This document shows positions 13,990 to 38,146 of a stretch of DNA of 64,000 nt, piece after piece. Numbering within the stretch: the first letter of the stretch is position 1; each line of letters opens with the position of its first letter. The DNA lies in NCBI GenBank assembly GCA_038087875.1, contig CM075985.1, positions 7,874,001 through 7,938,000 on the forward strand, read 5' to 3'. The DNA comes from Malacoraja senta (taxonomy: Eukaryota). A model generated the notes under the pieces. It had not been told where the DNA came from, made no database searches, and was given only the letters and a program-made list of their open reading frames with translations. The position numbers and the translations under genes are program-made.

Positions 13990-14190
13990 GGTAGACAAAA
14001 AGCTGGAGAAACTCAGCGGGCGAGGCAGCATCTATGGAGCGAAGGAATGGGTGACGTTTCGGGTCGAGACCCTTCTTCAGACTGCGTCACCCGTTCCTTC
14101 GCTCCATAGATGCTGCCTCATCTGATGAGTTTCTCCAGCTTTTTGTCTACCTTCAATTTTTCCAGCATCTGCAGTTCTTTCTTAAACATA
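13990..14190. repeat. Foldback derivative of the Penelope pseudo-LTR
   Basis: The arm gtagacaaaaagctggagaaactcagc...gaaggaatgggtgacg is mirrored by cgtcacccgttccttcgctccatagatgc...ctttttgtctac, around one hammerhead-like core. Confidence 0.75.
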
Positions 14191-16397: not shown

Positions 16398-17196
16398 TGT
16401 GTTAAGAAGGAACTGCAGATGCTGGAAAATCGAAGGTACACAAAATGCTGGAGAAACTCAGCGGGTGCAGCAGCATCTATGGAGCGAAGGAAATAGGTAA
16501 CGTTTCGGGCCGAAACCCTTCTTCAGACTGATAGGGGGTGGGAGAAGAAAGGAAAAAAGGAAAAGGAGGAGGAGGAGCCCGAGGGCTGGGGGAGGGGAGG
16601 AGACAACCAGATGGCTGATGAAGGGGATGGGACAGCCAGGGCCCAAGCAGTCGTTCCAGGTGCGACAGAGGTTCACCTGCATCTCCTCCAACCTCATCTA
16701 TTGCATTCGCTGCTCTAGATGCCAGCTGATCTACATCGGTGAGACCAAGCGGAGGCTTGGCGATCGTTTCACCGAACACCTCCGGTCGGTCCGCCATAAC
16801 CAAACCTGAACTCCCGGTGGCTCAGCACTTCAACTCCCCCTCCCATTCCGTATCTGACCTCTCTGTCCTGGGTCTCCTCCATGGCCACAGCGAGCAACAC
16901 CGTAAATTGGAGGAAATGCACCTCATATTCCGCTTGGGCAGTCTACATCCTGGGGGCTTGAACGTTGAATTCTCCCAATTCTGCGAGCCCTGGCTGTCCC
17001 CTCCCCTTCATCAGCCATCTGGTTGTCTCCTCCCCTCCCCCAGCCCTCGGGCTCCTCCTCCTCCTTTTCCTTTTTTCCTTTCTTCTCCCCACCCCCTAGC
17101 AGTCTGAAGAAGGGTTTCGGCCCGAAACGTTGCCTATTTCCTTCGCTCCATAGATGCTGCTGCACCCGCTGAGTTTCTCCAGCATTTTTGTGTACC
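16398..17196 (+). mobile_element. Short Penelope-like insertion with inverted pseudo-LTR (divergent arrangement)
   Basis: The reverse-oriented pLTR (16398-~16642) is joined to the GIY-YIG 3' end plus pLTR. A 14-bp TSD TACTGAATATAGAA sits at 16384-16397 and 17197-17210 inside a CR1. Nearly identical to the 52.8-55.4 kb element. Confidence 0.88.
17104..17131 (+). ncRNA. Minimal hammerhead-ribozyme-like core
   Basis: CTGAAGA A GGG TTTCGG CCC GAAA CGTT. Confidence 0.55.
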
Positions 17197-17959
17197 TACT
17201 GAATATAGAAGTTGTGATGATATGTTAAGGGGCTGTCCCACTGCGGTGACCTAATCTGCGAGTTTAGAAGAGTTTGCCCCTCGACTCAAACTCGCAGCAT
17301 TGTCGACACGTGGTCCCAGGAGGTCCTATGAGATCACTGGAACTCTCCTTCATGCTCGAGGGAAGTTTCTGCATGCCCGTGGCCTCAGTGGGGTCGCTAT
17401 TTAGTTACAGGCAGTCAAGGGCAGCCGTAGGCAATCTCCTTCGCTGACCGGAGCATTTTGATTGGCTCATTGGAGTTTTCAGGACCAAGTAAAACTGACC
17501 GGTAGGTAAAATGCCCGCTAAACTTTATTATCTTATCTAGTTATAAGATTAAAACTGTGTGTGTGTGTGTGTTTGTGGGTGTCAGATTTGGCCTTTGATT
17601 CCTTGGTCCGCCAAAACCACACACAGAAAGTCCGAGATTTTTTCCATTTCGCTAGACATTACACTTTTACATCCCCTAAGACACTCCTCATTAAATTTCG
17701 TCGTTTTTATGTACACATTTTCAATAAAATCCTTCCCCCCCCCTAAAATGTCAAAATGTTACAAAAATCAAACCGCTCTCACCCATAGAATGTGGGTGAA
17801 CGTTCCATTCTGTGATGTCACAATGCCATCCCTCACATATGGCCAATCGTAATGGAACCATTTACATATGACTTTGCACCAGCCCCGCCCCCCGCAGCCT
17901 GTCGAAGGGTGTGATCACGAGTGTGGGAATAGAGGGAGAGGAGTGGGGGTGATAGGGAG

Positions 17960-19060
17960 TGGGGAATAGATGGACTGCCCCAACCACTCCCACTCTCCCT
18001 CCCCACTCTTTCCCCTCTCCTCCCCACCCCTCTCCCCCTCCCTCCACTACCCCATCGCCCTCTCCTCCGCTCCCTCCCCTCCCCTCTCCCACACCTCTCT
18101 CCCCCTCCCTATCCCTCTCTCCTCCCCCTCCCCCACACCTCCCCCTCTCCATCTCCCTCTCCTCACCCCTCTCCCCTATCGTCCCCCTCCTCCTCCCACC
18201 CCCATCCCTCTCCCCCACCCTCCTTCCATCTCCCCCACCCCCTTCCCTCTCTCCCCTGCCCCCTTCCACCACTCCCTCTCCCCCTCTCTCCCCTCTTCTC
18301 CCACCCCTCACCACCCCCGTCCCTCCCCCACCCTCTCTCTCCCCCTCCCCCACCCCTTCCCACTACCCCTCTGCCCCTCTTCCACCACTCCCCCTACCCC
18401 TCTCCCCTCCCTCCCCAATCTTCCACTTTTCTCCCCCCTTACCCCACCCTCCCCACTTCTGTCCATCCCACCCTCTCTCCCCCTCCCTCCATCTCCCCCC
18501 ACCCCCTTCCCCTCTCTCCCTCTTCCACCACTCCCCCCTCCCCCCCTCTCTCACTTCCACCATACCCCCTACACCTCACCCCCTCCCTCCCCACTCTTCC
18601 ACCTCTCCCCCCACCCCCAACCCCACCCCTCTCTCTCCCCCCTCCCTTCCCTCTCCCTCCCCATACTTCCCCCTCTCTCCGGTCTCCCCCTCCCTCCACA
18701 CTCTTCCCCCTCTCTCCCCTACCCCTCCCGCCACTCTTCCCCCTCTCCCTCCCCTCCCTCTCCCCACCCCCCTCTCGCCCTCCTTCTCCCTCTTTCCCCC
18801 TCCCTCTCTCACCCCCTCTCCCACCCCTGTCTCTCCTCCGCCCTTTTCCCCCTCTCCATCTCCCCTCCTCACCCCTCTTCCCCTCCCACCCCAACCCCTC
18901 TCTCCCCCCCCACCTAACCCTCTCCCTCTTCCACCAGTCCCCCTACCCCTATCCCCCTCTTCCCCACTCCTCTCTCTCCCCCCCTCTCCCTCCCCCCTCC
19001 CCCCTCTCTCCACCTCTGCCCCATCCCTCTCACATCCGCTCCCCACCCCTATTTCTCCCC
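17960..19060. repeat. Polypyrimidine (C/T-rich) low-complexity tract
   Basis: Near-pure C/T on the + strand, built from degenerate ctctcc/ccactccc units. Confidence 0.9.
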
Positions 19061-19439
19061 CAACCGTTCATCGCAGCTGTTAACCGCTCCTAACCTCACA
19101 GCTGGAAGCAATGGTAAAGTGTACCATTAATTAAAGCAGCCAAGCTGCTGCTGCATTTACACTGTATGCTCACACGAGATCCGAACGCGTCTGGCCATAG
19201 CGGCTGCTGTCAACTTCAAATGGCTGCTGTCCAGCTCTCCCGCGCGCGGCGCCTATTGCAACGGCGGCGGGCGGCGCGAGGCCGAGTTACGTCAACATCC
19301 CCCCTTCCCCACGACGCGCGCTGGCATTTGGCTCTCCGACTCCTTCTCCCTCCCGCTGTCCATCTGCGTTCCTGTTCTGTATCCCTCTCTGAACGAGCAA
19401 GTTCTGCAGATCCGGAGGTCACCGGGGACAGGCGAGATC

Positions 19440-20160
19440 CTGGGGAGGTGAAGAGGGGGAGTGGGAGGTTTGAGGGAGAGGAGGGAGTAGGGAGGGAGAG
19501 TGGGGAATGGGGGAGGCGAGGAGGGAGAGTGCGGGAATAGAGGGAGAGGAGTGGGAGGTGATAGGGAGTGGGGAATAGGTGGACTCCCCACACCCATCCC
19601 TCTCTCTTCCCCCTCTCCATCTTCCTCTCCTCCCCCTCCTACCCCCTCTCACCCCCTTCCCTCTCTCCCCCCACCCCCCAACCCCTCTCGCTCTTCCACC
19701 ACTCCCCCTACCCCGCCCCCTCCCTCCCCACTCTTCCACTTCTCTCCCCCCTTCCCCCACCCCTCTCCCCCACTCTACCCTCCCCCTCCCTCACCACTCT
19801 TCCCCCTCTCCCCCCTCCTACCACTCTCCCCCTCCCTCCTCACTCTTCCCCCTCCTACCTCTCCCCCACCCCTCACCCCCTCCCCGAACCCTCTCTCACC
19901 CCCTCCCCCCTTCTCCATCTCCCCCTCACCCTCCTCCCCTCCCCCACCCCTCTTCACCCCCATCTCTCCCCCACCACCTTCCCCTCTCTCTTGCACCACT
20001 CCCAGCTACCCCTCCCTCCCCCTCCCCTCTCCACCTGTCCCGCCCCTCTAACATCCACTCCTCCCCCTCCCACTCCCCTCCCCCTCTCTCCCCGCTCTCC
20101 TCTCCCTCCTCACCTTCCCCTCTCCGTCTCCCCCTCCCTCCCTCTCCCTCTACCCCCCTG
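19440..20160. repeat. G-rich then C-rich low-complexity tract
   Basis: A purine run at 19440-19580 is followed by a polypyrimidine run. It starts with the same gatagggagtgggg-aatag-tggact motif as the 17.95 kb tract. Confidence 0.85.
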
Positions 20161-23100
20161 TGTGTTTGGGGGGTGGTTAGTGTGAGTGTGACGCCGCAGC
20201 CCCCCCCCCACCCCAAACGCGCATTGGGGAAACAGACCCAAACGGGTCTGCACTTGGTCTAGTACTTGTTAAAAGTGTCTCCGCTCCTTCCCCCCCCCCC
20301 TCTCTAAATGATTTACCATACACTATGCAGCCGTCTTTTACCTTCCTCATCATCGCGGGGTTGAATTTCAGACAGTGCCCCTCCACTTTCCCTGGCCCCC
20401 GCCTTTGCGATATGTGTGTGTGTATGTGTGCGGTCGGTCGATCCAGCTCGCGGTTTCAAAGCTGACAGTCGATCCAGCTCGCGGTTTCAACGCTGAGAGT
20501 CGATCCAGCTCGTGGTTTTTCAGGCGAGTGCCCTCGAGCTTGAAGGTGAAGACACTCTTCTTAACTCGTGGATTAGGTCGCCGCAGTGGGACAGCCCCTT
20601 TACAGTTGTAAAAGATATTGACGAGGCTGCATTTGGGGTCACGTGTTCAGTTTTGGTCACCCTGCTGTAGGAAGCATGTTAAGCTGGATAGAATGCAGAG
20701 AAGATTTATGAGGATGTTGCCAGGACATGAGGGCCTGAGATATAGGGAGAGATTGGGTGGTTAGGACATTATTCCTTGGAGCACAGAAGGCCGAGGGGTG
20801 ATCTTAGAGATGTATAAAATCATGAGGGGAATAGATAGGGTGAATGTAGTCTTTTACCCAGAGTAGAGGAATCAAGAACTAGAGGACAGGTTTAAGGTGA
20901 GGGGATAGATTTAATAGACACCTGATGGAGAAATAAGGAAGAGCTGCCAGAGGTGGTAGTTGAGGCAACAACATTTAAAAGACATTTGGACAGGTACATG
21001 AATAGGAAAGGCTTAGTGGGATTTGGGCCAAACATGGCAATTGAGACCTGTGTAAATGGGGCATCATGGTCGACATGGGTAAGTTGGGCCGAAGGCACAG
21101 TTTCCGTGCTGTATGGCTCTAAAAAACTGTTCTTGAACCTGATGATCACGGTTTCCACTCTTATACCTTCTTCCTGGTGGTAGGAGCCAAATGCAAGCAT
21201 GGCTAGGGTGTTGGGGGTCTTTGATGATATTGGTTGGCTTTTAGCACAGCACCTCCTATGAAGGTCAGTAGCTGTGATGGACCGAGCAGTGTCTACCTCT
21301 CCGAGAGAGAAGGAAGAGGCACTATATTGAATACTTTTGTAACCTTGTCCTTTACATGGCGACTCTTGCACACTTGTACTGTATGCAAACAAGGAATCTC
21401 ACTGTACCAAGTACACGTGACAATAAAGTATCAATCAAACAATTTGTTCTTTGGCTTTTGACTTGACAGTGAAGCAACCAGTCAATATGCCCTCCACCAT
21501 GCAGTCGTCAACCAGGATAATTACCCAAATCTCTTTGCTTTAAGCACTTGTGTGCAGAGCCTGAATGAAGATATGGAGTTACCCGCATGAATGAATATCC
21601 TACCAGCACTCATTTTGCTTAATCAGTAGCTGGAGAGCAGCCAATTGGCACGAGGTACCAAGACAGAGACTCAGCACTATACGGCAGAGGAGAAACATAA
21701 CAAAAAAATCATCGATTCAACATTAATTCACGTTGGGATGACTTTTGTTGGACATACTGTACAGCTGACAGTGCATTGCTAATGAACTTGTCAGCTGCCT
21801 TGGAGAAATTAGATTCCCCTCTTCTCAGTTATACTTCTAGCTTTGATACTAATCATTCTGGAACTGAGCAGAGCTTTGGTTACAGAAGATGAAAAGCATC
21901 AAGAGTTTATTATTGCCATTGACATTGTGCAAGGGTCAGACATTAGTTATATATGAGGCAGGTTCTAACACAGCACGATGGGATGTGCAAGGTCTATTCT
22001 CACTATCTCACGAGCAAAGCTACCTAAAGTAGCAATGGCATCTTAAAACTCACCTGCCAGGAGATTGTATGTTAGAAAAACACTGTCACTGAAATAATTG
22101 CTCCAGTTTACCTGAACCCTTCAGAACTATATCGGTCTCCGTCTTTGCATTCCTGGACTGTGCCCAACGCAAATGCCTGTAATCTGATCTTACTCTCATT
22201 TCCAGCCTCTCTTTCTCTGTCAAAACACAGACCTGAATCTCAGCGAGACTAAAGAAAAAGAGATTTAGTCAAAGCATCAGCTCATCAAGGACAACCTGCA
22301 GGATAGTGGACAAAACACAAAGTGCTGGAGGAACTCAGGCAGCACCTGTGGAGGGAATGGACAGGTGACGTTTCAGTTCAGGGTCCTTCTTCAGACTGGT
22401 TGTAGTAGTGAGGAGGAAGCTGGAAATGAGATGTGGGGCAGGGACAAAACCTGGCAAACGATAGGTGGATAGACACAAAGCGCAGGAGTATCTCAGTAGG
22501 TCAGGCAGCATATCTGGAGAAAATGGATGGGTGACGTTTTGGGCCGGGACTCTTCAGGTGAGCAGGAGGGGGGAGTGGTTTCATTGGCAGATGGGAGGAA
22601 TAAATGTCAAAGGGTAGAGGTGAAAAGGAAACAAAAAGGGTGTTGGAAAAGAGGAGGGGGTGTAAAGTCAAGTTCCATGCTGGTACATTCTATACATATG
22701 AATCATCAGCAGGCATAGACCTCTCTCACAGACCCACGAGCCACCCCCACCCTTAAACAAGATCATGGCTAATCCAATTCTAACCACATTCCTGCCAACA
22801 TGAGGCACTTTTCACCTCTTGCTTAGCAAGGATACCTGCATCTGCCTTAAAACATTTAAAGACTGTCTGCTTTCACTGTTCTTTAGGGAAGAGTTCCAAA
22901 GACCCAACTGAGGAAAGATATTTAGCCTCCGTTATCTTAAATTATATTTCCACAATGACACTAGTTCCAGATTCTTCTACAAAACATCTACTCTGCATGA
23001 ATCTATTCATAACCTTTCTGGAGTGCACGTTTTAATCAAATCCCCTCTCACTCTTCTAAACTCCCTGCCTGACTGACCTTTCCCCACAAGACCACCCACC

Positions 23101-24705
23101 AACTCCAGGTATCAGTCTAGTTCACCTCTCTGAACTGCTTCTCGAGCTTTTACATTGTTCCTTAAATAAGACCAAAGCTGTACACAGTACTCCAGACTCA
23201 CCACTACCGCATGTAACTATTATTATGTACTCAATACTCCATGTCTACACTCGTTTTCACATAGGCCACAGCTAACAATGGCCTGTTTCATATGGTCATA
23301 GGAATAGGTTAGAATTAGGCCATTCGGCCCATCAAGTCTATTCCGCCATTCAATCATGGCTGATCTATCTCTCCCTCCTAACCCCATTCGCCTGCGAGGA
23401 AGGGTGGAGATAAATTCAACAGCTGGCATACTTGGTTATCTCCAACAATCTGGGAGGTTCTAACGTGTGCTCAGGTTCATGAAGTTAGATTTAAATCCTC
23501 AATCTCTTGATTTAGAAGCAAATATGCCAACAAATGATTCTACAAATAAATAAGCAACTTGCAATCCTACTTCTTATTCACTTCTCAATTTAAGCATTAG
23601 TTGCTACAAGTCCTAGTCCTCACATGTAGGTTCAATTATAAAGTGTTGCTGCTTTACTCCGTATTGGTAAACTCTAATTTTTGAAAACATAATGTGATCA
23701 GAAGAGCACTCATTAGAAATACTAACACAGAGAACAAATAATCAGAACAATGACTTAATCATTTCATTTACTTAAAATAAAAGAAATATTTTTTTTTTTA
23801 AAGATTCGAATTTATTTGACCATTTATTTCTCAAGCACTGTTCTTGAGGCCTTCCCAGCCAATTACCTTTGAAACATAGTTACCATTGGGAATAATTGTA
23901 CACAGAATGATATTAAACAAAGGACAGGCCAAAAGGTCTAGTTTAGCAGTAAATGCTGGCTGGGAATCCACATTCATCTACACTTCTGAAGAAGGGTTTT
24001 GACCCGAAACGTTGCCTATTTCCTTCGCTCCATAGATGCTGCCTCACCCGCTGAGTTTCTCCAGCATTTCTGTCTACTTTCATCTTCACATATATTTGGA
24101 CAGGGTCTTTTACATTACATCCTGCAAAAGATTGGATGGCTTTGGTATAAATCTCACCCAGAAGTCGGCATGCACACAAATACTGCACTCTCTCAGTCCT
24201 TATGTACCAGTCTGGATCTTGTTCTCAAGACTCAGCCACCTTAGAACTAACCGCCTGACCTGCTGGTAAGAAATGACTAAAATCACTGCAAAATTAAGCC
24301 TCGCCATTGCCTAAAGGAGATTTAGTGAAGCTCGATTGTCAACTTCTGATTAAATTGCCTCACAGTGCAGATGTGAATGGTGAGAGAAATTAAGGTAGGC
24401 CACTCAGAAGCTGTTTAAATCTTTAAAATAAAGATTTGGAAAAAAAATAATAGTAAATTGATTTGTGATAATCAAGTATATTTAACTAATCTGACCCCAT
24501 ACTTATTGAGAAGGAATTTTCAATATTACAAATATTAATGGCACAGACATGTTTCTACCATCTGAGGTAACATTCAACTAATGGTATCATTGTGTAATCC
24601 ATTTTTTTTAAATGGTCTGATTAGTTAAAGTATAAAGGCTGTCTATGATTTTCTTTTCGGCAGAAACCTCCTCCCAGTTATTGCAAGCAAGATGATCTGA
24701 CCAGC

Positions 24706-24746
<41 letters not shown>
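24706..24746. repeat. (GA)n microsatellite in the putative legumain-like 3' UTR
   Basis: Direct inspection. Confidence 0.9.
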
Positions 24747-24750
<4 letters not shown>

Positions 24751-24858
24751 CTCTAAAAAATTACAATTCCAGTTGGAAAGCACACGGGCTGAGGGAGGGA
24801 CAGGTCCTTCCTGAGGGTCCCACCCTCTGCTGTGCTGAAGATGAGGAGAGCCAGCTCT

Positions 24859-24904
24859 TCATTTCTTCAGCTTTTCACTGACTTGGTCAATAGCTTCTTT
24901 GATC
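24859..24904 (-). CDS. LGMN: Legumain-like terminal coding exon (IKEAIDQVSEKLKK*)
   Basis: Acceptor tttttaaatag|G completes the Arg codon (phase 2). The peptide matches human IKLSMDHVC... and ends in TGA. Confidence 0.8.
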
Positions 24905-25928
24905 CTATTTAAAAACAAAGGAGTGATTACAATGCAGCTCGTGGACAGGGGGTTAGCACAGAAAAAAAAGTTTTGGAAAAAATGGAACACAATCTACATT
25001 TGTTAAGAAAAGAGGCAAAGATCTATTACAATTTTGACGGCTCCTTTCCAAGACAAGAGATCCAAGATGAACAATTTCAACCAATGTTTGATTCAAGATG
25101 ACAAAGTGGAGACACTTATTTTGGACAAAAATACGTCAGTACATTTAATGCTTTTCAATACTTTCGGATTGAATGACAATACTTTCATGATTATATTACC
25201 AGCACTTTCCTTAATTCTCTGACTTGAATGGTCCTGAACTGATGACTAAAAGGAGGCTTTGATTGTGCTGGGTCAATTGCTGTAAACTTTCCCTCTGCCC
25301 GGGATTCCCTGCTTCAAAAAGACAAGACTGTACAAAGTTAGCCTGCTGCTAACTCAGACTTGAAGGCTGATTTTGATGATTATTTCAAGTTTGACAAAGG
25401 CTATTGCTGTTTTTACTCTGGGTAACCTGACCTAGCTCACGATATCCCTGTTGTATTGTGGATCTTAGCCGCATTACTCTGAGTAAATAGACCTGATCAG
25501 TTTAATTACATAAAATAGCATCCATTACACTAAGCGGCACAGAAACATACTATCATGCTGTTTAGTTTAGTTTAAAGATACAGCATGGAAACAAGCCCTT
25601 CGCCCCACGGAGTCTAAACCTACAATCAATCACCCACTCACACTAATTCCATGCTATCCCACCTTCTCACCCATCCTTGCACACTAGGGGCAATTTACAG
25701 AGGCAAATTAACCTACACGAGTTTGGGATGTGGGAGGAAACTAGAGCACTTGGAGGAAGCCAAAGGGACCACAGGGAGAATATACATAATATACACATTG
25801 CACTGCCCAGCTCACTACTTTCCCATCAGGCTTTCTGTTAAAGGGATCAATGATCTGTTAAGAGTTAATTCCAGATGTTATTTGCTTTGATTGCTTGAGC
25901 AAAGAGAGAGAGTTGGGTATTACTGTAC

Positions 25929-25996
25929 CGTGTCAGTGGGATCTGCTCCACACATAAATTGACGAAGGGACTCAACTGGTGAAGAGCATATTCATA
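25929..25996 (-). CDS. LGMN: Legumain-like exon (YEYALHQLSPFVNLCVEQIPLTR)
   Basis: 68 nt, phase 0-2, flanked by ttacag| and |gtacag. Matches human exon 13 [23 protein letters not shown] in length and sequence. Confidence 0.88.
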
Positions 25997-27289
25997 CTGT
26001 AACAACAAAGCACAACATTGGACTATCCCACATTTTCTCACATTAACCCAATCTTTGGCCATGCGCACCCTTTTTTTGCCTCTTTGTGCCACCCATGTGT
26101 CATCCTCACAACTCACTTTCCTACCCATCATTATGTAACATACTGTAACAATGTACATCAGAACAATTATTTACAGTGCCCAGACTGGTGCAGAGGGATT
26201 CCTCTTTTCCACACCATTCACAACCATGAGATACTCCAAAATTCTCAACTTCTCACTATACCTCCCACCCCTCACCTCAACCACTTTCTTATGTTCTCCA
26301 TGCTGAGATTGGGCACTGGAACAACACGAAGCAACACCCAGGCGCCTACTCTTCTCTAGGGCCAAAACCCTATGCTTTGTGCAACATTTCAGACTGTTAG
26401 AGTTGTATAGCACAGAAAAGGTCCTTTGACCCACCCATCCAATTCCGATCGTCAATCCCACACTGCACACTGTCTTACAGTACCAAGATCCTGACTATAT
26501 GTGCTGTCTGTATAGAGCTTGTATGTTCTCCCTGTGACCGTGTGGGTTTTCACTGAGTGCTCCAGTTTCCTCCGACATTCCAAGGACATGCAGGTTTGTT
26601 GGTTAATTGGCTTCTGTAAGTTGTCCCTATTGTGTAGGATAGAACTAGTGTACAGGAGATTGGTTGCTGGCATGAACTCGGTGGGCCGCAGGGCCCGTTT
26701 CCCTACTATATCTCTAAATTAAACTAAATTTGCCCTCCCAGTTTCCATCACTCACCTGCACACTAGGAGCAATTTTTTACAGCGGCTACCAACCAGCATG
26801 TCTTTGGGACGTAAGAGAAATCCTGAATATTCAGGGGGAAAACAAACCCAGGCAGTGACAGGGAGATCGTACAAGCTCCAAACATTCAGTCCCAGAGATC
26901 AGGATTGAAACCCAATCGCTGGAACTGTGAGGCAGCAACACAGCTAACTGCAGCACTGTACTGCCCCTATTAAATCTGGCTCTTCCTGTGGTCATTGGTT
27001 TCAGTTAAGAAGCTGCTCAATGCTGCATAGAGCTGTTTTATCAGTGCTGTGAAAAGCAGCAGAGTTCCCACCCAGTCTTCTTCTTGTCGTGTCGCTACAC
27101 TTTTCCAAGCCGCTGCACAACGCAGGCTCTGGCACATGGGTTGAAGACCCTGAGATCTTCTGGTTTGCAGGTCTCTGGGAGGAGGGGGCAAGTACCCTGC
27201 CTCTCTCCCCTCCTTAAAGCTAACACGTTGACCCAGCTTTTGATCGCCTACCCTGGTATATTTTCTCTTTGGCCTCTTGATAATATTGA

Positions 27290-28163
27290 TTTGACAATGG
27301 TCGCATGGACTCACCGTGGCAGCTATCTCTGTACTATGGTCGGTGAGGCAGCTTTTTCTCCGGGCTGCCCCGTCGACCCGTCCTTGCGGCCTACCAGCGG
27401 GCGTGGAGCGGCGTTTTCCTGGCAGGGACTGCCCAGCACCTTCAGCTTCGGTGGCGGCACAGCGCTGGAGCGCTATCGCAGAGCGGAGCAGGCGATGCCT
27501 TGCCTGGGTCGCCGCGCTGGATCGACGCGCTGGAGCTCCGGTGAGCTGCGACCGCCGAGCTCAACACCTCCAGGCTGCGGGACTGCGGAGCGACCAGCCG
27601 CGGGCGGCGCCGCCGACTCCAACATCGTGAGCCTCTGAGCTCCAAATCGGCGCGGCCTTGTCGGCTTCAGGTGCCACGGACTCCGGTAGGGAATCGGCCG
27701 TCCCAGCCGCTGCGAGGACTTTCCCGACGCCAGGACAACTGCACCCGGCGAGAACGGCCAGGAACATCGGGCCTCCGTAGAGGCAACTGTGGAGGCCTCA
27801 ATAGGCCTGACTTTGGGTGAACTGGGGTTGGGGACTGGACATTGTGCCTTCCCCCACAGTGGTAATCATTGTGGGGAGATGATTTTGTGTGTAATGTGTA
27901 GTGTCTATGTTAGTCTATGTCCAAGATGGCGGTCGGAAGGGAGAGTGGACGCTGGCGCGCTTTAGCAGCCGCTGCTCTCTCTTCTATATTGTGTTTTGAT
28001 TTTTGTTTTTGGATTTAATTCTATCTTTAATTTGTGTACTGGTGATGTCTTTGCTATTTATTTCATTCCGCTTACATGTTTCTACACTATTTGTTAAACT
28101 TTGTAAGGTGTCTTTGAGACTTTGTGAAAGGCGCCCATAAATAAAATCTATTATTATTATTAT
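27290..28163 (+). mobile_element. GC-rich non-autonomous retroelement with an L2-type 3' tail
   Basis: A CpG-rich body is followed by gtaaggtgtctttgagactttgtgaaaggcgcccataaataaaatctattattattat, resembling L2 3' ends. The 5' boundary is approximate. Confidence 0.55.
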
Positions 28164-28184
28164 GTGAATGCAACACAGACGTAC

Positions 28185-28355
28185 CTCTGGATTATGCCAG
28201 TCAAAGCACCGCATTTGGAAATACTCCACCGCAGAGCGGTAGTTTTCCCGCTCCGTGAGGCGCTTCTTGGGGGCGAGCACTCGCTCAGCCTGTTCCTCGG
28301 AGTCGGTGGCCAGAGTAACAATCTCTCGCACGGTCTGTCGGATTAACTCCCTCAC
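28185..28355 (-). CDS. LGMN: Legumain-like exon (VRELIRQTVREIVTLA...EYFQMRCFDWHNPE)
   Basis: 171 nt, phase 0-0, flanked by ttgcag| and |gtacgt. Length and sequence match human LGMN exon 12 (ARHLIEKSVRKIVSLL...HFRTHCFNWHSPT). Confidence 0.88.
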
Positions 28356-28619
28356 CTGCAACACAACAGAGCTGTTTGGTTACACCCCGACCACAAGGGA
28401 AGGACCCGTATCGTGTATCTGTACACTGTAAATGGCGCAATTGTAATCATGTATTGTCTTGGTAGCACCACTACCAGTGTGTGTCTCCCTGCACTGTAGG
28501 CAGGTTAGTGAGGCTCTTCCCCACACTGACTAGCACCATCCAAGTCTCCTTGCTGGTTCCTGATGAGTGAAGATGCCTCGTATGGGGCCCAGGGTAAAGG
28601 AACAAGTTTGCACCATTAC

Positions 28620-28826
28620 CTCAAGGAGATGGTCCAGGTCTTTCTGCAGCTTTTCCTTCTCCTCTGGATCCTTAGCAGCTTTGATCCTATTCTCAAGAAG
28701 AGTAACAGGTACGTCGCACTGTGCCACAGTCTCCATTCCCGCCATTACTGTGGGTTTGCCCGTGCCTGCAGCAGGAAGCAACATGGGAACACTGTAATTC
28801 TCACAAAGAGACAAAGCTCTCCAATC
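28620..28826 (-). CDS. LGMN: Legumain-like, exon equivalent to human exon 11 (activation peptide to start of LSAM: ...AQCDVPVTLLENRIKAAKDPEEKEKLQKDLDHLLE)
   Basis: Aligns with human [35 protein letters not shown], with a phase-0 donor GAG|GTAATG at 28620. The 5' boundary is uncertain: ccgttag|GAT at 28826 (phase 0, 207 nt) or aattacag|T at 28791 (phase 2). In-frame ATG at 28784. Confidence 0.72.
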
Positions 28827-28920
28827 CTAACGGAGCAGCACAGAGAGTCTGGACACCTCAAAGAGCACGAATCAATATTTATCATCAGGATTCTCCTAAT
28901 CAGTGACTTAAACATGACGA

Positions 28921-29785
28921 TATTGTATTGTATTGTATATCTTTATTGTCATTTCCTGAGTATTCGCATACCCAGAGGAAACAAAAAAACGTTCCTCAAC
29001 CAGTGTCCATTTCAGTGTGTGCAGTAAAAAATAAATAGAAGTAAAAATACATATATCATGAACAAATTAACACTCTACTAAACATCAACAGGCGTTCCGA
29101 TCGGCAGCGGCACGACAGTGGCTCTGCTGCAGTGTGTCCAGGTTGGTGGTTGGTGCACGATACTTTGGCAGGGGACAAAGTCCGTTTATCAGTCTTATAA
29201 CCTGCGGGAAGAAGCTGAGGAGCATCCTGCTGGTTTTGCACCTAATGCTCCGGTACCTCTTCCCAGATGGCAGGATGGAGAATATGTGATGGGATGGGTG
29301 GTAGGGGTCTTTGATGATGGAGATGGCTCTGCTGATACATCTCTTCCTGTATATGTCCAGCAGGAAAGGGAGTGGAGCACCAATAATCCTGCTGGCGGTC
29401 TTCACAATCCTGTCTAGTTGGTGCCGTTCGTACGCCTTGCAGCTCCCGAACCAGGAAGTGATGCCGTAGGTTAATGTGCTCTCGATTGTCCCCCTATAAA
29501 AAGTTCGTAGGTGTGTAGTGGGGAGACCTGCTTTACGTAGTCTTCGGAGAGGGTGTAGTCGCTGCTGGGCTCTCTTGACCAGTGCTGTGGTGTTGGTCGT
29601 GGACGTCAGGTCATCTGACAGGTGGAGTCCTAGGAACTTCACGCTGTTGACCCTTTCCACATCAGCTCCATCGATGTGCAGAGGTGTATGGTGTTGTTTT
29701 CCCGCCCTCCTGAAGTCAACCACCATCTCCTTAGTTTTTCCCACGTTAAGAATGAGGTTGTGGGATTTGCACCATCCTGTGATAT
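28921..29785 (-). mobile_element. Rex1/Babar-type LINE 3' fragment
   Basis: Open frame WCKSHNLILNVGKTKEMVVDFRR...KFLG...FYRGTIESTLTYGITSWFG...LPSGKRYRSI...SFFPQ, with a (CAATA)n-like tail at 28921-28938. Confidence 0.85.
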
Positions 29786-30922
29786 TCAGGATAGTCAGGG
29801 GGCTTTTACAGTTCATTCTCATGCATATCATTTCATTAGCTCAGAAAGACCCCGAGAAACTGAAGAAGGGTCTCGGCCCGAAACGTCAACCATTCCTTTT
29901 CTCCAGAGATGCTGCCTGCCCCACTGAGTTACTCCAGCATTTTGTGTCTTATTTCCGAGATCCACACGGCTGGTGAAACACTGCGATGCAGAATTGTTGT
30001 TGTATTGTCGGGACTATGGCAGTGTGTTTGCTTCCTGGTAACCAGCAGATAACTGAGCCGTGAATCAAATCAAAAAAGGTTGGCAGATTGGGGGATTTTG
30101 CATCGACGCCACCGCATGGAACGTGACAATCTTGTGACCTGACAGATATCTCACGGCGCGGGAAGGAGGGGGCCAGTGGCATTTCTGCCAGATACACACA
30201 AAATGCTGGAGTAACTCAGCGAGACAGGCAGCATCTCTGGGGAGAAGGAATGGGTGACATTTCGTGTCGAGACCCTTCTTCAGACAGAAGTCAGGGAAGA
30301 GGGAGATACATAGATAAGGAAGTGTATGATGTGGAGTGGATGTTGATCAAGGAATTCTGTCAGTTTCCGCTGCCGGCAGGCTTTTCCCAAACTGAACACG
30401 AGGGGGCAAAACCTGACCAGAGGCTGAAGAAAGGTTTCGACCGAGAACACCGTGTGTCTGTGCCCGCCACTGGGGGAGGCTGCCTGACCCACTGAGTCCC
30501 CCAGCACTTTGTGTCTTCCTCCTTGACTCCTCGTCCCCGTCGCCCTACACTGTATGATTCCCTACTCCCACCAACCTCCCTGATCATCATCATCCCAGCT
30601 ATTATATTTACCAATTTAATCATTTCCTTCCCAGGAGAAAACATGTTTAATGTAGGAACTGCAGATGCTGGTTTACACCGAAAATAGACACAAAATGCTG
30701 GAGTAACTCAGCGGGACAGGCAGCATCTCGGGTGACGCTTCGGGTCGAGACCCTTCTTCAAACATTTAATTGGATATATAACTTTAAATTTGTTACATTG
30801 ATACTTCTTTCCACTTTAAAAAGTGATTTACAATAATCCACGGTCAATTTCAAAGAATAAATCTTACATATTCAGATACAGAGGATGGGGGAGGGATACC
30901 CCCAAATGGGAACTGAACTCAC

Positions 30923-31105
30923 CGAGTGCAAGCCTTCCCTGCAAGCTTTCACTCCGCGCTTCCTGGGAGCAACCTTGTCTGCGTTAGGGGAAGCTCCGCC
31001 CGGCTCACGCTTGCGCCTGGTCTACAGGGCGGGCTGTGGCCGCTCCCTGTTGACTCACCAGAGGCGGTGTCATCTCACCAGCCTCCCCTCGGTCAGCTGA
31101 CGGGA
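30923..31105 (-). promoter_or_regulatory. Candidate promoter plus non-coding first exon upstream of the legumain-like exons
   Basis: CpG-enriched patch with a strong donor CG|GTGAGT at 30923. It carries GC boxes (30996-31001, 31027-31032), an AP-1 site TGACTCA (31051-31057) and the palindrome GTCAGCTGAC (31092-31101). No ATG in the presumed exon. Confidence 0.4.
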
Positions 31106-31599
31106 CAGCAATGGAGACCAAAGATACTAGAGCAAGAGAGACGCTCCACGTCCAGCACGTTGGTGCATTCTAACTAAAATCTGGAGTAACTCAGCGGGAC
31201 AGGCAGCATCGTCTTCAGTCTGAAGAAGGGTCTCGATCCGAAACGTCACCCATTCCTTCTCTCCAGAGATGCTGCCTGTCCCGCTGAGTTATTCCACCAT
31301 TTTATGTCTATCTTTGGTGCATTCTAAGCAACAGGTTCAAGATCAGTGACAGCCCAACTGACCACAGACGCGCTCACTTTAATTCACCTTCTGTGATCAA
31401 CATAACGTCCGAAAGAAGGATCCCAAACCGAAACGTCGCCTTGTCCGTTGCCTCCACAGATGCTGCCTGACTCGCTGATTTACTCCAGTACTTTTTGCTC
31501 CAGATTCCAGCATTTGCAGTCTTTTGACTGTCCCTCTGATAGATTTTATAACTGAGACTCCACATTAAATGAAAACAGAAAATGCCGTAAATACTCAGC

Positions 31600-32720
31600 A
31601 GGCCGGGCAGTATCTGCGATTCCAAGGCACAGTGACAGGCCCTTCGGCCCAACTTGTCCATGCCAACCAAGGTGCCCATATGCATTAATCCCACCTGCCC
31701 GCATTGTCCCAGATCCCTCTAAACATTTCCTATCCATGATACACGTACAAATGTATTTTAAATGTTGCCAATGGTTCTTGCCTCAAACTACCCCATCTGG
31801 CTGTTCTTTTCCACCACCCTGTGTGAAAAAGGTGCCCCTCAGGTTCCTATTAAATGTTTCCCGTCTCACCTTAAACTTGACCCCCCCCCCATTCTAGTAA
31901 AAGTGTGCATTAACCCCATCTATCCCTCCATGGTTTTATACACCTCTATAAGATCACCACTCAACCTCCTGTGCCCCAAGGAATAAAATCCTAGTCTACC
32001 CAACCTGTTGCTCATGCCTTTGAGTCCTGGTAACATCCTCATAAATCTTCTCTGCAGTCTTTCAAGCTTAACAGCATCTTTCCTATAGCAGGGAGACTAA
32101 AACTGAACACAATGCTACAAATGTGGCCCCACCAATGTCTTGTCCAACTGTAACATAACATCCCAACGTCTATACTCAATACCCTGACTGATGAAGGCCG
32201 ATATACTGAAAGCTTTCTTGACCACCAGATCTACCCATGACACCATTTTCAGATAACTATGTACCTGTACTCCTAGATCCCTCTGCCCTCCAATACATGA
32301 CAATAAACTCACTTGACTTGACTTGATCCCTCTGCCCTCCAATACTCCCCAGGACCCTACCATTTATTGTGAAGCTCCTGCCCTGGTTTGACTTCCCAAA
32401 ATGAAATATCTCACACTTATCTGCATTAGAGTCCACGAGCCATTCCTCAGTTCACTTGTCCAATTGATCAAGGTCCTGCTGTAATTTTTGATAACCATCT
32501 TCATTATCTACGATACCTCCCACTTTAGTGCCATCTGCAAACTTGCTAATCATGCTTTGTACATTCTCATCCAAATTGTTGATGTAAACCATGAACAGCA
32601 ATGGGCCCAGCACTGAATCTGAGGCATACCACCCATATTCTGTATCAAACCAATTCTGTAATCAGTTGGCTAGCTCTCTCTGGATCCCACGTGACCTAGA
32701 CTTCCAGAGCCATCAACCGT
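31600..32720 (-). mobile_element. Degenerate CR1 3' fragment
   Basis: Reverse-strand CR1 ORF2 C-terminal motifs (LVGPHLE.CVQF) and 3' UTR. Confidence 0.75.
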
Positions 32721-34879: not shown

Positions 34880-36405
34880 CAGTGGCTTGCAAAAGTATTC
34901 ATACCCCTTGAACTTTTTCCACATTTTGTCACGTTACAACCACAAACGTAAATGTATTTTATTGGGATTTTATGTGATAGACCAACACAAAGTGGCGCAT
35001 AATTGTGAAGTGGTAGGAAAATGATACATGGTTTTCAAATTTTTTTACAAATAAAAAACTGAAAAGTGTTGCGTGCAAAAGTATTCAGCCCCCTTTACTC
35101 CGATACCCCTAAATAAAATCCAGTGCAACCAATTGCCTTCAGAAGTCACCTAATTAGTAAATAGAGTCCACTTGTGTGTAATCTAATCTCAGTATAAATA
35201 CAGCTGTTCTGTGAAGGCCTCAGAGGTTTGTTAGAGAACATTAGTGAACAAACAGCATCATGAAGCCCAAGGAACACACCAGACAGGTCAGGGATAAAGT
35301 TGTGGAGAAGTTTAAAGCAGGGTTAGGTTATAAAAAAATATCCCAAGCTTTGAACATCTCACGGAGCACTGTTCAATCCTTCATCCGAAAATGGAAAGAG
35401 TATGGCACAACTGCAAACCTACCAAGACATGGCCGTCCACCTAAACTGACAGGCCGGGCAAGGAGAGCATTGATCAGAGAAGCAGCCAAGAGGCCCATGG
35501 TAACTCTGGAGGAGTTGCAGAGATCCACAGCTCAGGTGGGAGCATCTGTCCAAAGGACAACTATTAGTCGTGCACTCCACAAATCGGGCCTTTATGGAAG
35601 AGTGGCAAGAAAAAAGCCATTGTTGAAAAAAAGCCATAAGAAGTCCCGTTTTCAGTTTGCCACAAGCCATGTAGGGGACACAGCAAACTTGTGGAGGAAG
35701 GTGCTCTGGTCAGATGAGACCAAAATTGAAGTTTTTGGCCTAAATGCAAAACGCTATGTGTGGCGGAAACCTAACACTGCACATCACCCTGAACACACCA
35801 TCCCCACTGTGAAACATGGTGGTGGCAGCATCATGCTGTGGGGATGCTTTTCTTCAGCAGAGACAGGGAAGCTGGTCAGAGTTGATGGGAAGATGGATGG
35901 AGCCAAATACAGGGCAATCTTGGAAGAAAACCTGTTAGAGTCTGCAAAAGACTTGAGACTGGGGCTACAATGGAATGGTTTAGATCAAAGCATATTCATG
36001 TGTTAGAATGGCCCAGTCAAAGTCCAGACCTAAATCCAATTGAGAATCTCTGGCAAGTCTTGAAAATTGCTGTTCACAGACGCTCTCCATCCAATCTGAC
36101 TGAGCTTGAGCTATTTTGCAAAGAAGAATGGGCAAAAATTTCAGTCTCTAGATGTGCAAAGCTGGTAGAGACATACCCCAAAAGACTTGCAGCTGTAATT
36201 GCAGCGAAAGGTGGTTCTACAAATTATTGACTCAGGGGGGCTGAATACTTTTGCACGCGACACTTTTCAGTTTTTTATTTGTAAAAATATTTGAAAACCA
36301 TGTATCATTTTCCTTCCACTTCACAATTATGCGCCACTTTGTGTTGGTCTACCACATAAAATCCCAATAAAATACATTTACGTTTGTGGTTGTAACGTTA
36401 CAAAA
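34880..36405 (+). mobile_element. Tc1-like DNA transposon (long IR-DR TIRs), defective
   Basis: TA|CAGTGGCTTGCAAAAGTATT left end and about 200-bp inverted repeats (outer right end missing). Transposase 35260-36230 has WSDETK, GGSIMLWGCF and [15 protein letters not shown]. An internal deletion near 35965 removes the QQDNDPKH motif and shifts the frame. Confidence 0.93.
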
Positions 36406-37761: not shown

Positions 37762-38146
37762 TTAAGGAAGTTGTTTCAGAGGAAGTGGTGCAGGGGTATG
37801 GAGCTGCAACCCATTCTCCTTGTCTGGAACATCAATCATTGTGGCTTTGTCCTTCTGAAGATATTTGTTAATATTTGCTTTTATCTTTCCTATCCTTACC
37901 CGGGTGTCTAGATCAGGTATGGTACTCTCATCTCCCAGATCTTTCAGAATGGACTTCAATAGTTTGCACAGCCACTTTGTGCCGTAACTCTGCCCAAGGG
38001 AGGGAAGCATTTGAACCTGACTTTCAACTCGGAGTAAGAGGTCTTCATCATCTCTGATTTTAGTGATGATCTTTAGCCCGTGACACAGCTTTTCGACTTG
38101 TTGAATGTTTTTCTGTCCAAGATCATCAAGTTTGTTTGCACATAAA
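37762..38146 (-). CDS. IgV-TM-NLR receptor: terminal exon (last LRR plus about 100-aa tail)
   Basis: Acceptor ttgctttcag|T (phase 2) gives LCANKLDDLG, and the frame stays open to a stop at 37762. Confidence 0.75.

What the first reader, a model, noticed from the sequence alone, without database searches (positions are those of the whole stretch)
24859..31105. Legumain-like locus that appears to encode only the death-domain-like LSAM prodomain
Seen: only exons equivalent to human LGMN 11-14 are recognisable, with exact 171-nt and 68-nt lengths. I found no signal-peptide or catalytic exon (HG, EACES motifs) between 28826 and the NLR stop at 37762; that interval is mostly SINE, CR1, Rex1 and Tc1. 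A promoter-like CpG patch with a strong donor sits at 30923, and the first ATG after splicing (28784) is in frame, giving a 149-aa protein without a leader. Established: the legumain LSAM adopts a death-domain-like fold. Inference: a stand-alone, probably cytosolic, death-fold-like protein encoded co-directionally just downstream of an NLR that lacks its own death fold, and so a candidate adaptor or partner. A partial-duplication pseudogene is the alternative.
Basis: partly seen in the sequence, partly recalled or inferred. Interest (0 to 1): 0.72.

Follow-up and report, generated by a model that had tools for sequence, protein, structure and literature searches.

The report
Skate gene encoding only legumain's prodomain
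This is a real, transcribed skate gene for a small 136-residue protein made only of the tail (prodomain) of the lysosomal protease legumain; it has been kept in sharks, rays and early ray-finned fishes for over 400 million years and its role is untested, but I found no sign that it works with the neighbouring NLR gene.

Summary
The four legumain-tail exons are real (146, 171, 68 and 46 nt, minus strand, all AG/GT). No catalytic exon lies anywhere in the 64-kb window.

In-frame stops close the 5'UTR, so the protein starts at ATG 28745 and has 136 aa, not 149.

It is not a pseudogene:
- Orthologues of 133-148 aa, named "legumain-like" and carrying only the Pfam legumain prodomain, occur in 14 or more sharks and rays, gar, sturgeon, tarpon, bonefish, milkfish, suckers, characins and catfishes.
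- They form one clade (support 100) that mirrors the species tree.
- dN/dS is 0.11-0.19.

The predicted fold matches the prolegumain prodomain (TM 0.81). The family lacks a leader and has lost both LSAM disulfides, the Asn323 autocleavage site and Arg403. It has gained invariant residues of its own.

The NLR-partner idea is not supported. An NLR lies upstream only in another skate, not in sawfish, whale shark, gar, bonefish or catfish, and fold searches return no death-fold protein.

Most likely it is a cytosolic, non-enzymatic LSAM-fold binding protein. A propeptide-like regulator of legumain is the main rival. I found no paper describing it.

The parts
30923..31205 (-). Exon 1, non-coding 5'UTR. 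The 5' end is not fixed, because 31205 is only where the contig ends. It lies in a CpG-rich patch and carries a 23-codon uORF and two in-frame stops.
   Evidence: X2 contig record 10 lays 30922-31205 directly next to 28763-28618. Three Logan mRNA contigs match 30970-30940 just before exon 2. In-frame stops. CpG observed/expected 0.64-0.71.
28620..28765 (-). Exon 2 (146 nt), with the start codon at 28745-28743. It encodes MAGMETVAQCDVPV... to ...DHLLE, which is the C-terminal half of the legumain activation peptide from the Asp309-equivalent DVP motif onwards.
   Evidence: Acceptor ctgcag|GC and donor GAG|gtaatg. Joined to exon 3 in contigs of X1, X2 and X28 (X3 covers exons 2 and 3 on separate contigs) and in L007-L009. 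74% identical to the whale-shark protein.
28185..28355 (-). Exon 3 (171 nt, phase 0 at both ends). It encodes LSAM helices and includes the Arg342 equivalent and the family-specific TDSEEQA motif.
   Evidence: PDB legumain hits at E=2e-7. tblastn E=1e-10 to 1e-13 to canonical legumains. The 171-nt length is kept in Rhinoraja, Pristis and Rhincodon.
25929..25996 (-). Exon 4 (68 nt), encoding YEYALHQLSPFVNLCVEQIPLT(R).
   Evidence: Splice sites. In the mRNA contigs at 25998-25928. The 68-nt length is kept in Rhinoraja, Pristis and gar.
24051..24904 (-). Exon 5: the last 14 codons (..RIKEAIDQVSEKLKK), the stop at 24861-24859, and at least 808 nt of 3'UTR. The contigs end in a repeat at about 24051.
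   Evidence: mRNA contigs lay 24905-24051 at 87% identity. The C-terminal motif is conserved across the family.
28766..30922 (-). Intron 1.
   Evidence: Skipped in the X2 contig and in L007-L009. The ORF matches Pfam ALKBH8_N, a match of the kind I know (from memory) to occur in LINE reverse-transcriptase tails.

Best explanation
Shown: the locus is a complete, expressed five-exon gene with one non-coding and four coding exons (window about 31205-24051, minus strand). Its 136-aa product consists only of the C-terminal part of legumain's activation peptide plus the LSAM prodomain. It has no signal peptide, no membrane segment and no protease domain. It is the skate orthologue of an old LSAM-only paralogue of legumain, which RefSeq and UniProt pipelines name 'legumain-like' or 'Legumain prodomain domain-containing protein'. 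This paralogue is present in cartilaginous fishes and in non-neoteleost ray-finned fishes, always beside a separate full-length LGMN, and it evolves under strong purifying selection.

Inferred: after splitting from legumain the protein changed quickly (long stem branch). It lost what ties LSAM to its own protease in the secretory pathway: both disulfides, the Asn323 autocleavage site and Arg403 of the double-arginine motif. It then fixed residues of its own. Most likely it is therefore a cytosolic or nuclear, non-enzymatic six-helix binding module with a function of its own. Its partner is unknown and is not indicated to be the neighbouring NLR.
For: Gene structure and expression:
- Spliced contigs from X1, X2 and X28 join exons 2-3 (X3 covers both exons on separate contigs), and the X2 contig also joins exons 1-2.
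- Three further 1.3-kb Logan mRNA contigs carry the uninterrupted 136-aa ORF, which is 97% identical to the window product, and map to all five exons.
- In-frame stops lie upstream of the ATG in the window and in all three mRNAs.

No protease part: tblastn of five full-length legumains finds no catalytic exon in 64 kb.

Family:
- 47 proteins, most with PF20985 as their only precomputed Pfam domain (one misprediction carries a reverse-transcriptase domain), 133-148 aa in RefSeq models, in 14 or more chondrichthyans plus gar, sturgeon, Elopomorpha, Chanos, catostomids, Characiformes and Siluriformes.
- Pfam Legum_prodom scores 34-46 bits against a cut-off of 25.2, covering positions 2-96 of 97.
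- In the tree the LSAM-only sequences form one clade (SH-aLRT 100, stem 1.26 substitutions per site), and its inner branching follows the species tree.

Selection:
- dN/dS is 0.11 (Rhinoraja), 0.17 (Pristis) and 0.19 (Rhincodon), with a synonymous excess at p=2e-7 to 8e-9.
- Exon lengths of 171 and 68 nt are conserved.

Fold: the AlphaFold2 model has pLDDT 87.8 and pTM 0.80 with six helices. It matches the prolegumain prodomain at TM 0.80-0.81 and rmsd 1.8-2.0 A over about 122 residues.

Lost hallmarks (37 LSAM-only against 11 canonical sequences):
- Cys378 and Cys429 equivalents: 0 of 37 against 11 of 11.
- Asn323 equivalent: none of the 37 has Asn; 30 have Lys.
- Arg403 equivalent: 0 of 37.

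Gained invariants include K124, I21 and V7 (37 of 37) and E63 (36 of 37).

No leader: the maximum Kyte-Doolittle(19) score is 0.7.

Published roles of the lost features: two LSAM disulfides (PMC12320161); the Arg342/Arg403 motif is critical for carboxypeptidase activity (PMC8491156); a positively charged LSAM stabilises the acidic catalytic domain (PMC9788469).
Against: - No partner, localisation or phenotype was tested, so the functional part is inference from sequence.
- Several features shared with canonical prodomains remain invariant: the Asp309-equivalent DVP motif, Arg342, and the FxWH and RI..D.V motifs. The protein could therefore still dock on legumain's catalytic domain.
- Net charge is only mildly shifted: -4 to +1 in chondrichthyans against 0 to +4 in ten of the eleven canonical fish LSAMs (lamprey -2).
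- The RNA evidence comes from related skate species, because no RNA run of the window's own species was listed. Run X2 is flagged 'probably DNA'.
- The structure was predicted for P0067, a 97%-identical proxy, not for the window protein itself.
Confidence: 0.8

Rival explanations
1. Propeptide-like regulator of legumain. The free LSAM protein binds the legumain catalytic domain in trans wherever legumain escapes into the neutral cytosol or nucleus, capping or stabilising it. Stand-alone propeptide homologues such as CTLA-2, BCPI and crammer do this for cathepsin L-like proteases.
For: - The fold is that of the prodomain which caps the active site.
- The protein starts just before the invariant Asp309-equivalent DVP motif and keeps Arg342.
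- LSAM stays bound non-covalently to the catalytic domain at pH above 4 and stabilises it (PMC9788469, PMC8491156).
- Legumain is reported in cytosol and nucleus, where it needs inhibitors (PMC9579014 abstract).
- In gar the gene lies 5.7 kb upstream of a legumain-type catalytic gene.
Against: - Arg403, Asn323 and both disulfides are lost in all 37 members.
- Charge is less positive than in canonical LSAM.
- The long stem branch and clade-specific invariant residues suggest a changed surface.
- The protein has no leader, whereas most legumain is endolysosomal.
Confidence: 0.3
2. One reading: a cytosolic death-fold-like adaptor that partners the upstream membrane-anchored NLR, which lacks a death fold.
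For: - The two genes are co-directional neighbours in the window and in Rhinoraja.
- LSAM is called 'death domain-like' in the literature (PMC8491156).
- The protein is leaderless.
Against: - The gene family is far older and more widespread than this arrangement.
- No NLR last-exon homologue lies within 10 kb upstream in sawfish, whale shark, gar or bonefish.
- No other called gene lies within 10 kb in manta.
- Neighbours are TAF1-like and epimerase genes in bonefish, and EF-hand and MIR-domain genes in catfish.
- Fold searches give only legumain prodomains. No DD, CARD, PYD or DED structure is in the Foldseek top 50, nor in the VIA-align top 50, where the best non-legumain Z is 5.4 on a helix hairpin.
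- Exon 1 has in-frame stops, so there is no NLR-LSAM fusion ORF through it.
Confidence: 0.05
3. A partial-duplication pseudogene, or the 3' end of a full legumain gene whose catalytic exons lie outside the window.
For: Only the last four legumain-type exons are present. TEs fill the flanks.
Against: - The ORF, splice sites and exon phases are intact in skate, sawfish, whale shark and gar.
- dN/dS is 0.11-0.19.
- The mRNAs are spliced and their 5'UTR is closed by in-frame stops.
- Orthologues of the same length occur in many RefSeq annotations.
Confidence: 0.02

Closest known systems
C-terminal prodomain of prolegumain (activation peptide plus LSAM domain; Pfam PF20985; PDB 4FGU, 4NOK)
   Same: Homologous sequence: 35-38% identity to mammalian prodomains. 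The same six-helix fold (TM 0.80-0.81, rmsd 1.8-2.0 A). The same exon phases, and 171- and 68-nt exon lengths that are kept among the LSAM-only orthologues (canonical LGMN exon lengths were not checked). Shared invariant residues: DVP, Arg342, FxWH, N-L, R-I..D.V.
   Different: It is encoded by its own gene with no C13 catalytic domain and no signal peptide. Both disulfides, the Asn323 autocleavage site and Arg403 are lost. It has clade-specific invariant residues (K124, E63, I21, V7, P27). Net charge is less positive.
Stand-alone propeptide-like cysteine-protease inhibitors (MEROPS I29: mouse CTLA-2, Bombyx BCPI, Drosophila crammer). This comparison comes from my own knowledge and was not tested here.
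   Same: A small gene that copies only the regulatory pro-region of a lysosomal cysteine protease and persists beside the full enzyme gene.
   Different: Those derive from the N-terminal propeptide of papain-like (C1) proteases and are shown inhibitors. This one derives from the C-terminal prodomain of a C13 protease, and no inhibitory activity is known for it.
RefSeq and UniProt 'legumain-like' or 'Legumain prodomain domain-containing protein' entries (for example Rhinoraja longicauda P0061, Scyliorhinus canicula P0066, Pygocentrus XP_017554107.1, Albula A0A8T3E4Y1)
   Same: These are orthologues: 93% identity to Rhinoraja and 75-86% to sharks and sawfish, with the same 4-coding-exon structure and 133-148 aa length.
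   Different: None in kind. They are automatic annotations without functional study. The window adds one more species plus transcript evidence.
Death-domain superfamily adaptors (DD, DED, CARD, PYD)
   Same: A small all-helical bundle of six helices. The literature calls LSAM 'death domain-like'.
   Different: No sequence or structure match to any member was found in Foldseek or VIA-align searches. No conserved linkage to an NLR.

Membership tests
Legumain prodomain (Pfam PF20985 Legum_prodom) | Profile match above Pfam's gathering score over the whole domain | tested here: met
   P0067 (97% identical to the window product) scores 34.3 bits against a cut-off of 25.2, covering profile positions 2-96 of 97. 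Rhinoraja scores 36.6 and gar 45.8. The window's exon 3 alone hits PDB legumain at E=2e-7.
Legumain prodomain (Pfam PF20985 Legum_prodom) | Fold of the AP-LSAM helical bundle | tested here: met
   The AF2 model (pLDDT 87.8) against 4NOK and 4FGU: TM 0.80-0.81, rmsd 1.8-2.0 A, about 122 columns. VIA-align Z=11.5 to a plant prolegumain.
Functional zymogen prodomain of legumain | Two intradomain disulfides (four conserved Cys) | tested here: not met
   All 11 canonical fish LSAMs have 4 Cys. LSAM-only proteins have 0-2 of the four conserved LSAM cysteines. The Cys378 and Cys429 equivalents are absent in 37 of 37. Two disulfides in human LSAM: PMC12320161. The pairing 378-412 and 390-429 is from memory.
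Functional zymogen prodomain of legumain | Asn323 autocleavage site between AP and LSAM | tested here: not met
   The column is Asn in 11 of 11 canonical sequences. None of the 37 LSAM-only sequences has Asn there; 30 have Lys.
Functional zymogen prodomain of legumain | Double-arginine motif Arg342/Arg403 | tested here: not met
   The Arg342 equivalent is kept (VRELI). The Arg403 column is Arg in 11 of 11 canonical sequences but His, Gln, Asp or another non-Arg residue in all 37 LSAM-only sequences. Role of the motif: PMC8491156.
Peptidase C13 (legumain enzymes) | Caspase-like catalytic domain with the His148/Cys189 dyad, encoded in the same gene | tested here: not met
   No catalytic-domain hit in 64 kb with five full-length queries. 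The mRNA 5'UTRs carry in-frame stops.
Peptidase C13 (legumain enzymes) | N-terminal signal peptide for the secretory or lysosomal route | tested here: not met
   The N-terminus is MAGMETVAQCDVP. Maximum hydropathy is 1.0 (9-residue window) in the first 30 residues and 0.7 (19-residue window) overall. Residues 1-8 are disordered in the model.
Death-domain superfamily (DD/DED/CARD/PYD) | Structural match to a superfamily member | tested here: not met
   Foldseek PDB: ranks 1-36 are all legumains and the rest have E>1 and are unrelated. VIA-align wide search: the only hit that stands out is prolegumain, and no death-fold protein is in the top 50. Weak helical matches can be missed, so this does not prove the topologies differ.
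Pseudogene (partial duplicate) | Disrupted frame or splice sites, neutral substitution pattern, no spliced transcript | tested here: not met
   ORF and GT-AG sites are intact. dN/dS is 0.11-0.19. Spliced mRNA contigs come from at least 6 runs.
Propeptide-like protease inhibitors (I29-type analogy) | Binds and inhibits the cognate protease in trans | not testable with these tools
   This needs a binding or enzyme assay, or multimer modelling. The structure prediction folds single chains only.

The most novel reading that the evidence does not exclude
The LSAM-only protein is the founder of an unrecognised class: a protease prodomain freed from its enzyme more than 400 million years ago, moved to the cytosol and given a new role. 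That role could be a dedicated guard that captures legumain leaking from lysosomes, which would make it the first C13 counterpart of the propeptide-like inhibitors. Or it could be a death-fold-like signalling adaptor of fish innate immunity that tetrapods and neoteleosts appear to have lost.
Probability: 0.35. Interest if true: 0.7.

Novelty: new variant of a known kind. Interest (0 to 1): 0.5.

Why it matters
Legumain's LSAM domain is currently treated only as the part of the zymogen that caps and stabilises the protease. Whether it does anything on its own is an open question, and the first protocol for making isolated LSAM dates from 2025 (PMC12320161).

A leaderless, disulfide-free LSAM protein kept under strong purifying selection from sharks to catfishes suggests the fold has a function independent of being attached to the enzyme.

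It also offers natural material to test that. The protein should be easy to express in the bacterial cytosol, and species such as Astyanax, channel catfish or gar carry it.

For the scan, the result removes a tempting but unsupported link between this gene and the neighbouring unusual NLR.

Tried and rejected
1. Catalytic exons in the window. I ran tblastn with two partial and five full-length legumains, down to word size 2 and E=10. Only LSAM exons hit.
2. The acceptor actually used is 28765, so ATG 28784 is intronic. One contig (X1) does run unspliced to 28907, so a minor form cannot be excluded.
3. NLR linkage.
   - A NACHT-exon tblastn against other loci gave nothing. I discarded it as a test, because the NACHT exon would lie beyond a 10-kb flank anyway.
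   - I repeated the search with every ORF of 31.3-49 kb, including the NLR's last exon. Only Rhinoraja matched, apart from TE-like hits.
4. Death-fold similarity. Neither Foldseek PDB nor VIA-align wide gave a death-fold hit.
5. Literature. Four searches found nothing on a prodomain-only legumain gene. The 2017 elasmobranch paper on positive selection in legumain concerns full-length LGMN, at residues 105 and 261. The Dall and Brandstetter 2013 paper is not held.
6. Charge reversal as an argument against legumain binding. I found only a mild shift, which is not decisive.
7. Ancestral tandem arrangement with legumain. It is seen in gar only. The sterlet contig ends at the gene, and catfish, bonefish, sawfish and whale shark show no catalytic exons within 10 kb.
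8. Tree.
   - The careful tree did not finish in time, so the quick tree (SH-aLRT only) is reported.
   - No canonical chondrichthyan or tetrapod LGMN was among the 120 listed hits, so the position of the LSAM-only clade relative to canonical legumains, and hence the date of the duplication, is not resolved.
9. Folding the window protein itself. I did not hand it in, because it is a spliced product with no single reference. The 97%-identical P0067 was used instead.

Full report
**What is in the sequence**

On the minus strand there are four coding exons with canonical splice sites:
- 28765-28620 (146 nt)
- 28355-28185 (171 nt)
- 25996-25929 (68 nt)
- 24904-24859 (43 nt plus TGA)

The 171-nt exon alone matches solved legumain structures at E=2e-7. 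It aligns to the stretch RHLIEKSVRKIV...FNWHSP of the human prodomain.

I ran tblastn with two partial legumains and then five full-length ones (gar, bowfin, lamprey, tarpon, sturgeon). Only these LSAM exons were hit in the whole 64-kb window, and nothing from the catalytic domain appeared even at E=1.

**Transcripts**

No RNA run of the window's own species was listed, but RNA runs of related skates hold the exons. Laying four of them on 25700-31699 gave these contigs:
- X2 (1545 nt): joins 30922-31205 to 28763-28618 to 28353-28185 and continues 927 nt further 3'.
- X28: joins 28766-28618 to 28353-28185. X3 covers the same two exons on separate contigs.
- X1: joins the same two exons but runs on unspliced to 28907.

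Three further Logan contigs of about 1.3 kb (L007-L009) were fetched through the protein P0067. Each carries an uninterrupted 136-aa ORF. They map to 30970-30940, 28762/6-28620, 28355-28185, 25996-25929 and 24904-24051.

The patch around it is CpG-island-like (GC 0.64, observed/expected 0.64).

Exon 1 has two in-frame stops in the window. All three mRNA contigs have an in-frame stop 11 codons before the start. The ORF thus starts at ATG 28745, which has a purine at -3 and a G at +4, and encodes 136 aa beginning MAGMETVAQCDVPV. No catalytic part can be translated from these mRNAs.

Caveats: X2 is flagged 'probably DNA', and all transcript evidence comes from relatives at 94-97% identity in the coding exons.

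**It is a conserved gene family, not a relic**

An exhaustive HMMER search with the 171-nt exon found a whale-shark protein at 74% identity, and short fish proteins that start just before the same DVP motif and end with the same RIKxAIDxVSxxLKK tail.

A profile search then returned 47 proteins. Most carry the legumain prodomain as their only precomputed Pfam domain, and complete RefSeq models are 133-148 aa long. They come from:
- 14 or more sharks, rays and skates: Rhinoraja, Pristis, Narcine, Mobula, Hemitrygon, Scyliorhinus, Mustelus, Cetorhinus, Rhincodon, Stegostoma, Chiloscyllium, Heterodontus, Heptranchias, Pristiophorus
- gar, and a sturgeon-like Logan contig (sturgeon fragments also turned up in the first search)
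- tarpon, bonefish and milkfish
- suckers, characins and catfishes

RefSeq calls them 'legumain-like'. Chondrichthyan models begin MAGM.../ME.. and several are exactly 136 aa, which matches my model.

Tarpon, bonefish and milkfish each also carry a full 435-450-aa legumain. The contig lengths recorded for the two proteins differ, which suggests separate chromosomes.

In a maximum-likelihood tree of 32 LSAM-only sequences and 17 canonical prodomains, the LSAM-only sequences form one clade:
- SH-aLRT support is 100 and the stem is 1.26 substitutions per site.
- Inside the clade, Chondrichthyes separate from Actinopterygii.
- Within Actinopterygii the order is gar and sturgeon, then Elopomorpha, then Otocephala, following the species tree.

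That pattern is what vertical descent from the jawed-vertebrate ancestor predicts. This was the quick search only, and no canonical shark or tetrapod sequence was available, so the exact origin is unresolved.

I recovered the coding exons from genomic loci of Rhinoraja, Pristis, Rhincodon and gar. The 4-coding-exon structure and GT-AG sites are kept in all four. The 171-nt exon is kept in the three cartilaginous fishes (174 nt in gar), and the 68-nt exon in Rhinoraja, Pristis and gar (71 nt in whale shark).

| Comparison with the window | dN/dS | Protein identity |
|---|---|---|
| Rhinoraja | 0.11 | 93% |
| Pristis | 0.17 | 86% |
| Rhincodon | 0.19 | 75% |

dS is similar to intron divergence for the sawfish and the whale shark. 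The excess of synonymous changes has p=2e-7 to 8e-9. The pseudogene alternative is rejected.

**What the protein looks like**

The protein matches Pfam Legum_prodom over the whole profile, above the curated cut-off.

I predicted the structure with AlphaFold2 on a 48-sequence alignment, with the 97%-identical P0067 as the first row. The model is confident (pLDDT 87.8, pTM 0.80) and has six helices.

Foldseek matches the prodomain of mouse and human prolegumain at TM 0.80-0.81 and rmsd 1.8-2.0 A. Ranks 1-36 are all legumains. A Foldseek-independent VIA-align search gives prolegumain at Z=11.5 and nothing else above 5.4.

There is no hydrophobic leader or membrane segment.

I compared 37 LSAM-only sequences with 11 canonical fish prodomains column by column:

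| Position (human numbering) | Canonical (11) | LSAM-only (37) |
|---|---|---|
| Cys378 | Cys in 11 | Cys in 0 |
| Cys429 | Cys in 11 | Cys in 0 |
| Asn323 autocleavage site | Asn in 11 | Asn in 0; Lys in 30 |
| Arg403 | Arg in 11 | Arg in 0; His, Gln, Asp or other |

Several positions are kept in both groups: Asp309 (the DVP motif), Arg342, the FxWH motif, N-L, and R-I..D.V. The LSAM-only clade also has invariant residues of its own: K124, I21 and V7 in 37 of 37, E63 in 36 of 37, and P27 and A24 in 33 of 37.

The literature says:
- Human LSAM has two disulfides (PMC12320161).
- Arg342/Arg403 are critical for carboxypeptidase activity (PMC8491156).
- A positively charged LSAM stabilises the acidic catalytic domain (PMC9788469).

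The charge of the LSAM-only proteins is only mildly less positive.

**The NLR idea**

The upstream gene is an NLR. It has a 580-aa NACHT ORF at 42911-41169 and a last exon ending at 37762.

The same NLR-then-LSAM order is present in Rhinoraja, but that is a close relative whose whole locus is colinear with the window.

I searched every ORF of window 31.3-49 kb against the other loci. Sawfish, whale shark, gar and bonefish have no homologue of the NLR's terminal exon within 10 kb upstream. The neighbours elsewhere are:
- Whale shark: an unrelated 212-aa gene on the opposite strand.
- Bonefish: a TAF1-like gene and an epimerase.
- Catfish: EF-hand and MIR-domain genes.
- Manta: no other gene called within 10 kb.

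Flanks of 10 kb are short for cartilaginous-fish genomes, so looser linkage is not excluded. Even so, nothing ties this 400-million-year-old gene to an NLR outside skates, and the fold searches give no death-fold match. I put the adaptor idea at about 5%.

**How it most likely works**

Shown: the gene is a leaderless, expressed and strongly constrained protein that carries only the prodomain.

Inferred: without a leader and without the disulfides, the protein should fold in the reducing cytosol or nucleus. The evolutionary pattern is fast change on the stem, loss of the zymogen-specific sites, gain of its own invariant residues, and slow evolution afterwards. That pattern is typical of a duplicate that took on a new binding role. 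I therefore favour a non-enzymatic binding module with a partner still to be found.

The main rival, at about 30%, is a propeptide-like regulator that docks on legumain's catalytic domain outside the lysosome. This would be analogous to CTLA-2, BCPI and crammer for cathepsin L-like enzymes; that analogy comes from my own knowledge. Three things speak for it:
- The DVP and Arg342 residues are retained.
- LSAM is known to bind the catalytic domain non-covalently at neutral pH.
- In gar, a divergent legumain-type catalytic gene lies 5.7 kb downstream.

**Novelty and verdict**

The family is already present in RefSeq and UniProt under automatic names. In that sense the window adds a member plus transcript proof. 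I found no paper that describes a prodomain-only legumain gene.

It is best classed as a new variant of a known kind: legumain reduced to its prodomain. Interest is moderate. It bears on the open question of whether LSAM acts on its own, but the more exciting NLR link is not supported.

Noticed in passing
L001:19856-22591 (+), gar Atractosteus spatula: Exons of a divergent legumain catalytic domain (residues about 27-107, 47-74% identical to Lepisosteus LGMN) lie 5.7 kb downstream of the gar LSAM-only gene on the same strand. They are not part of any called gene. This hints that the LSAM-only gene arose by tandem partial duplication next to a legumain paralogue.
   Followed up: partly
window 27100-27900: A CpG-island-like patch (GC 0.61, CpG observed/expected 0.80) sits inside the intron between exons 28185 and 25996. 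RNA contigs cover it at low depth. It may be an internal or antisense promoter, or a GC-rich repeat.
   Followed up: no
window 28766-28907: One contig (X1, record 6) joins exons 3 and 2 but reads through the exon-2 acceptor to 28907.
   Followed up: partly
window about 31077-31006 (-): Exon 1 carries a 23-codon upstream ORF (MTPPLVSQQGAATARPVDQAQA, then a stop) in the same frame as the main ORF. The related skate's 5'UTR also has an in-frame stop but differs in sequence.
   Followed up: partly
window 18011-20159: A polypyrimidine, CCCTC-like low-complexity tract of about 2 kb (GC 0.63-0.68; GC skew -0.96 over 18001-19000 and -0.41 over 19001-20000).
   Followed up: no
window 53013-55196 (-): A 727-aa ORF with reverse-transcriptase and GIY-YIG matches, which points to a Penelope-like retroelement. 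It is 55-65% identical at protein level to a stretch upstream of the whale-shark gene (L005 3684-5806).
   Followed up: partly
window 35260-36006 (+) and 29085-29831 (-): A Tc1/Sleeping-Beauty-type transposase N-terminal relic lies between the NLR and this gene, and a LINE-tail ORF (Pfam ALKBH8_N match) lies inside intron 1. Short repeats at 29.9-31.5 kb reach very high depth in every RNA run.
   Followed up: partly
window 13737-24188 vs L004:14189-18484: Blocks downstream of the gene are conserved between skate and sawfish in several frames, which means nucleotide-level conservation. They could be 3'UTR, conserved non-coding elements or exons of an unidentified neighbour.
   Followed up: no
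AlphaFold DB cluster hit S4RNK1 (161 aa): A 161-aa 'Legumain prodomain domain-containing protein' is 37% identical to the model over residues 28-161. The tool does not show its organism. It may be a fragment of a full legumain or a further prodomain-only gene in another lineage.
   Followed up: no
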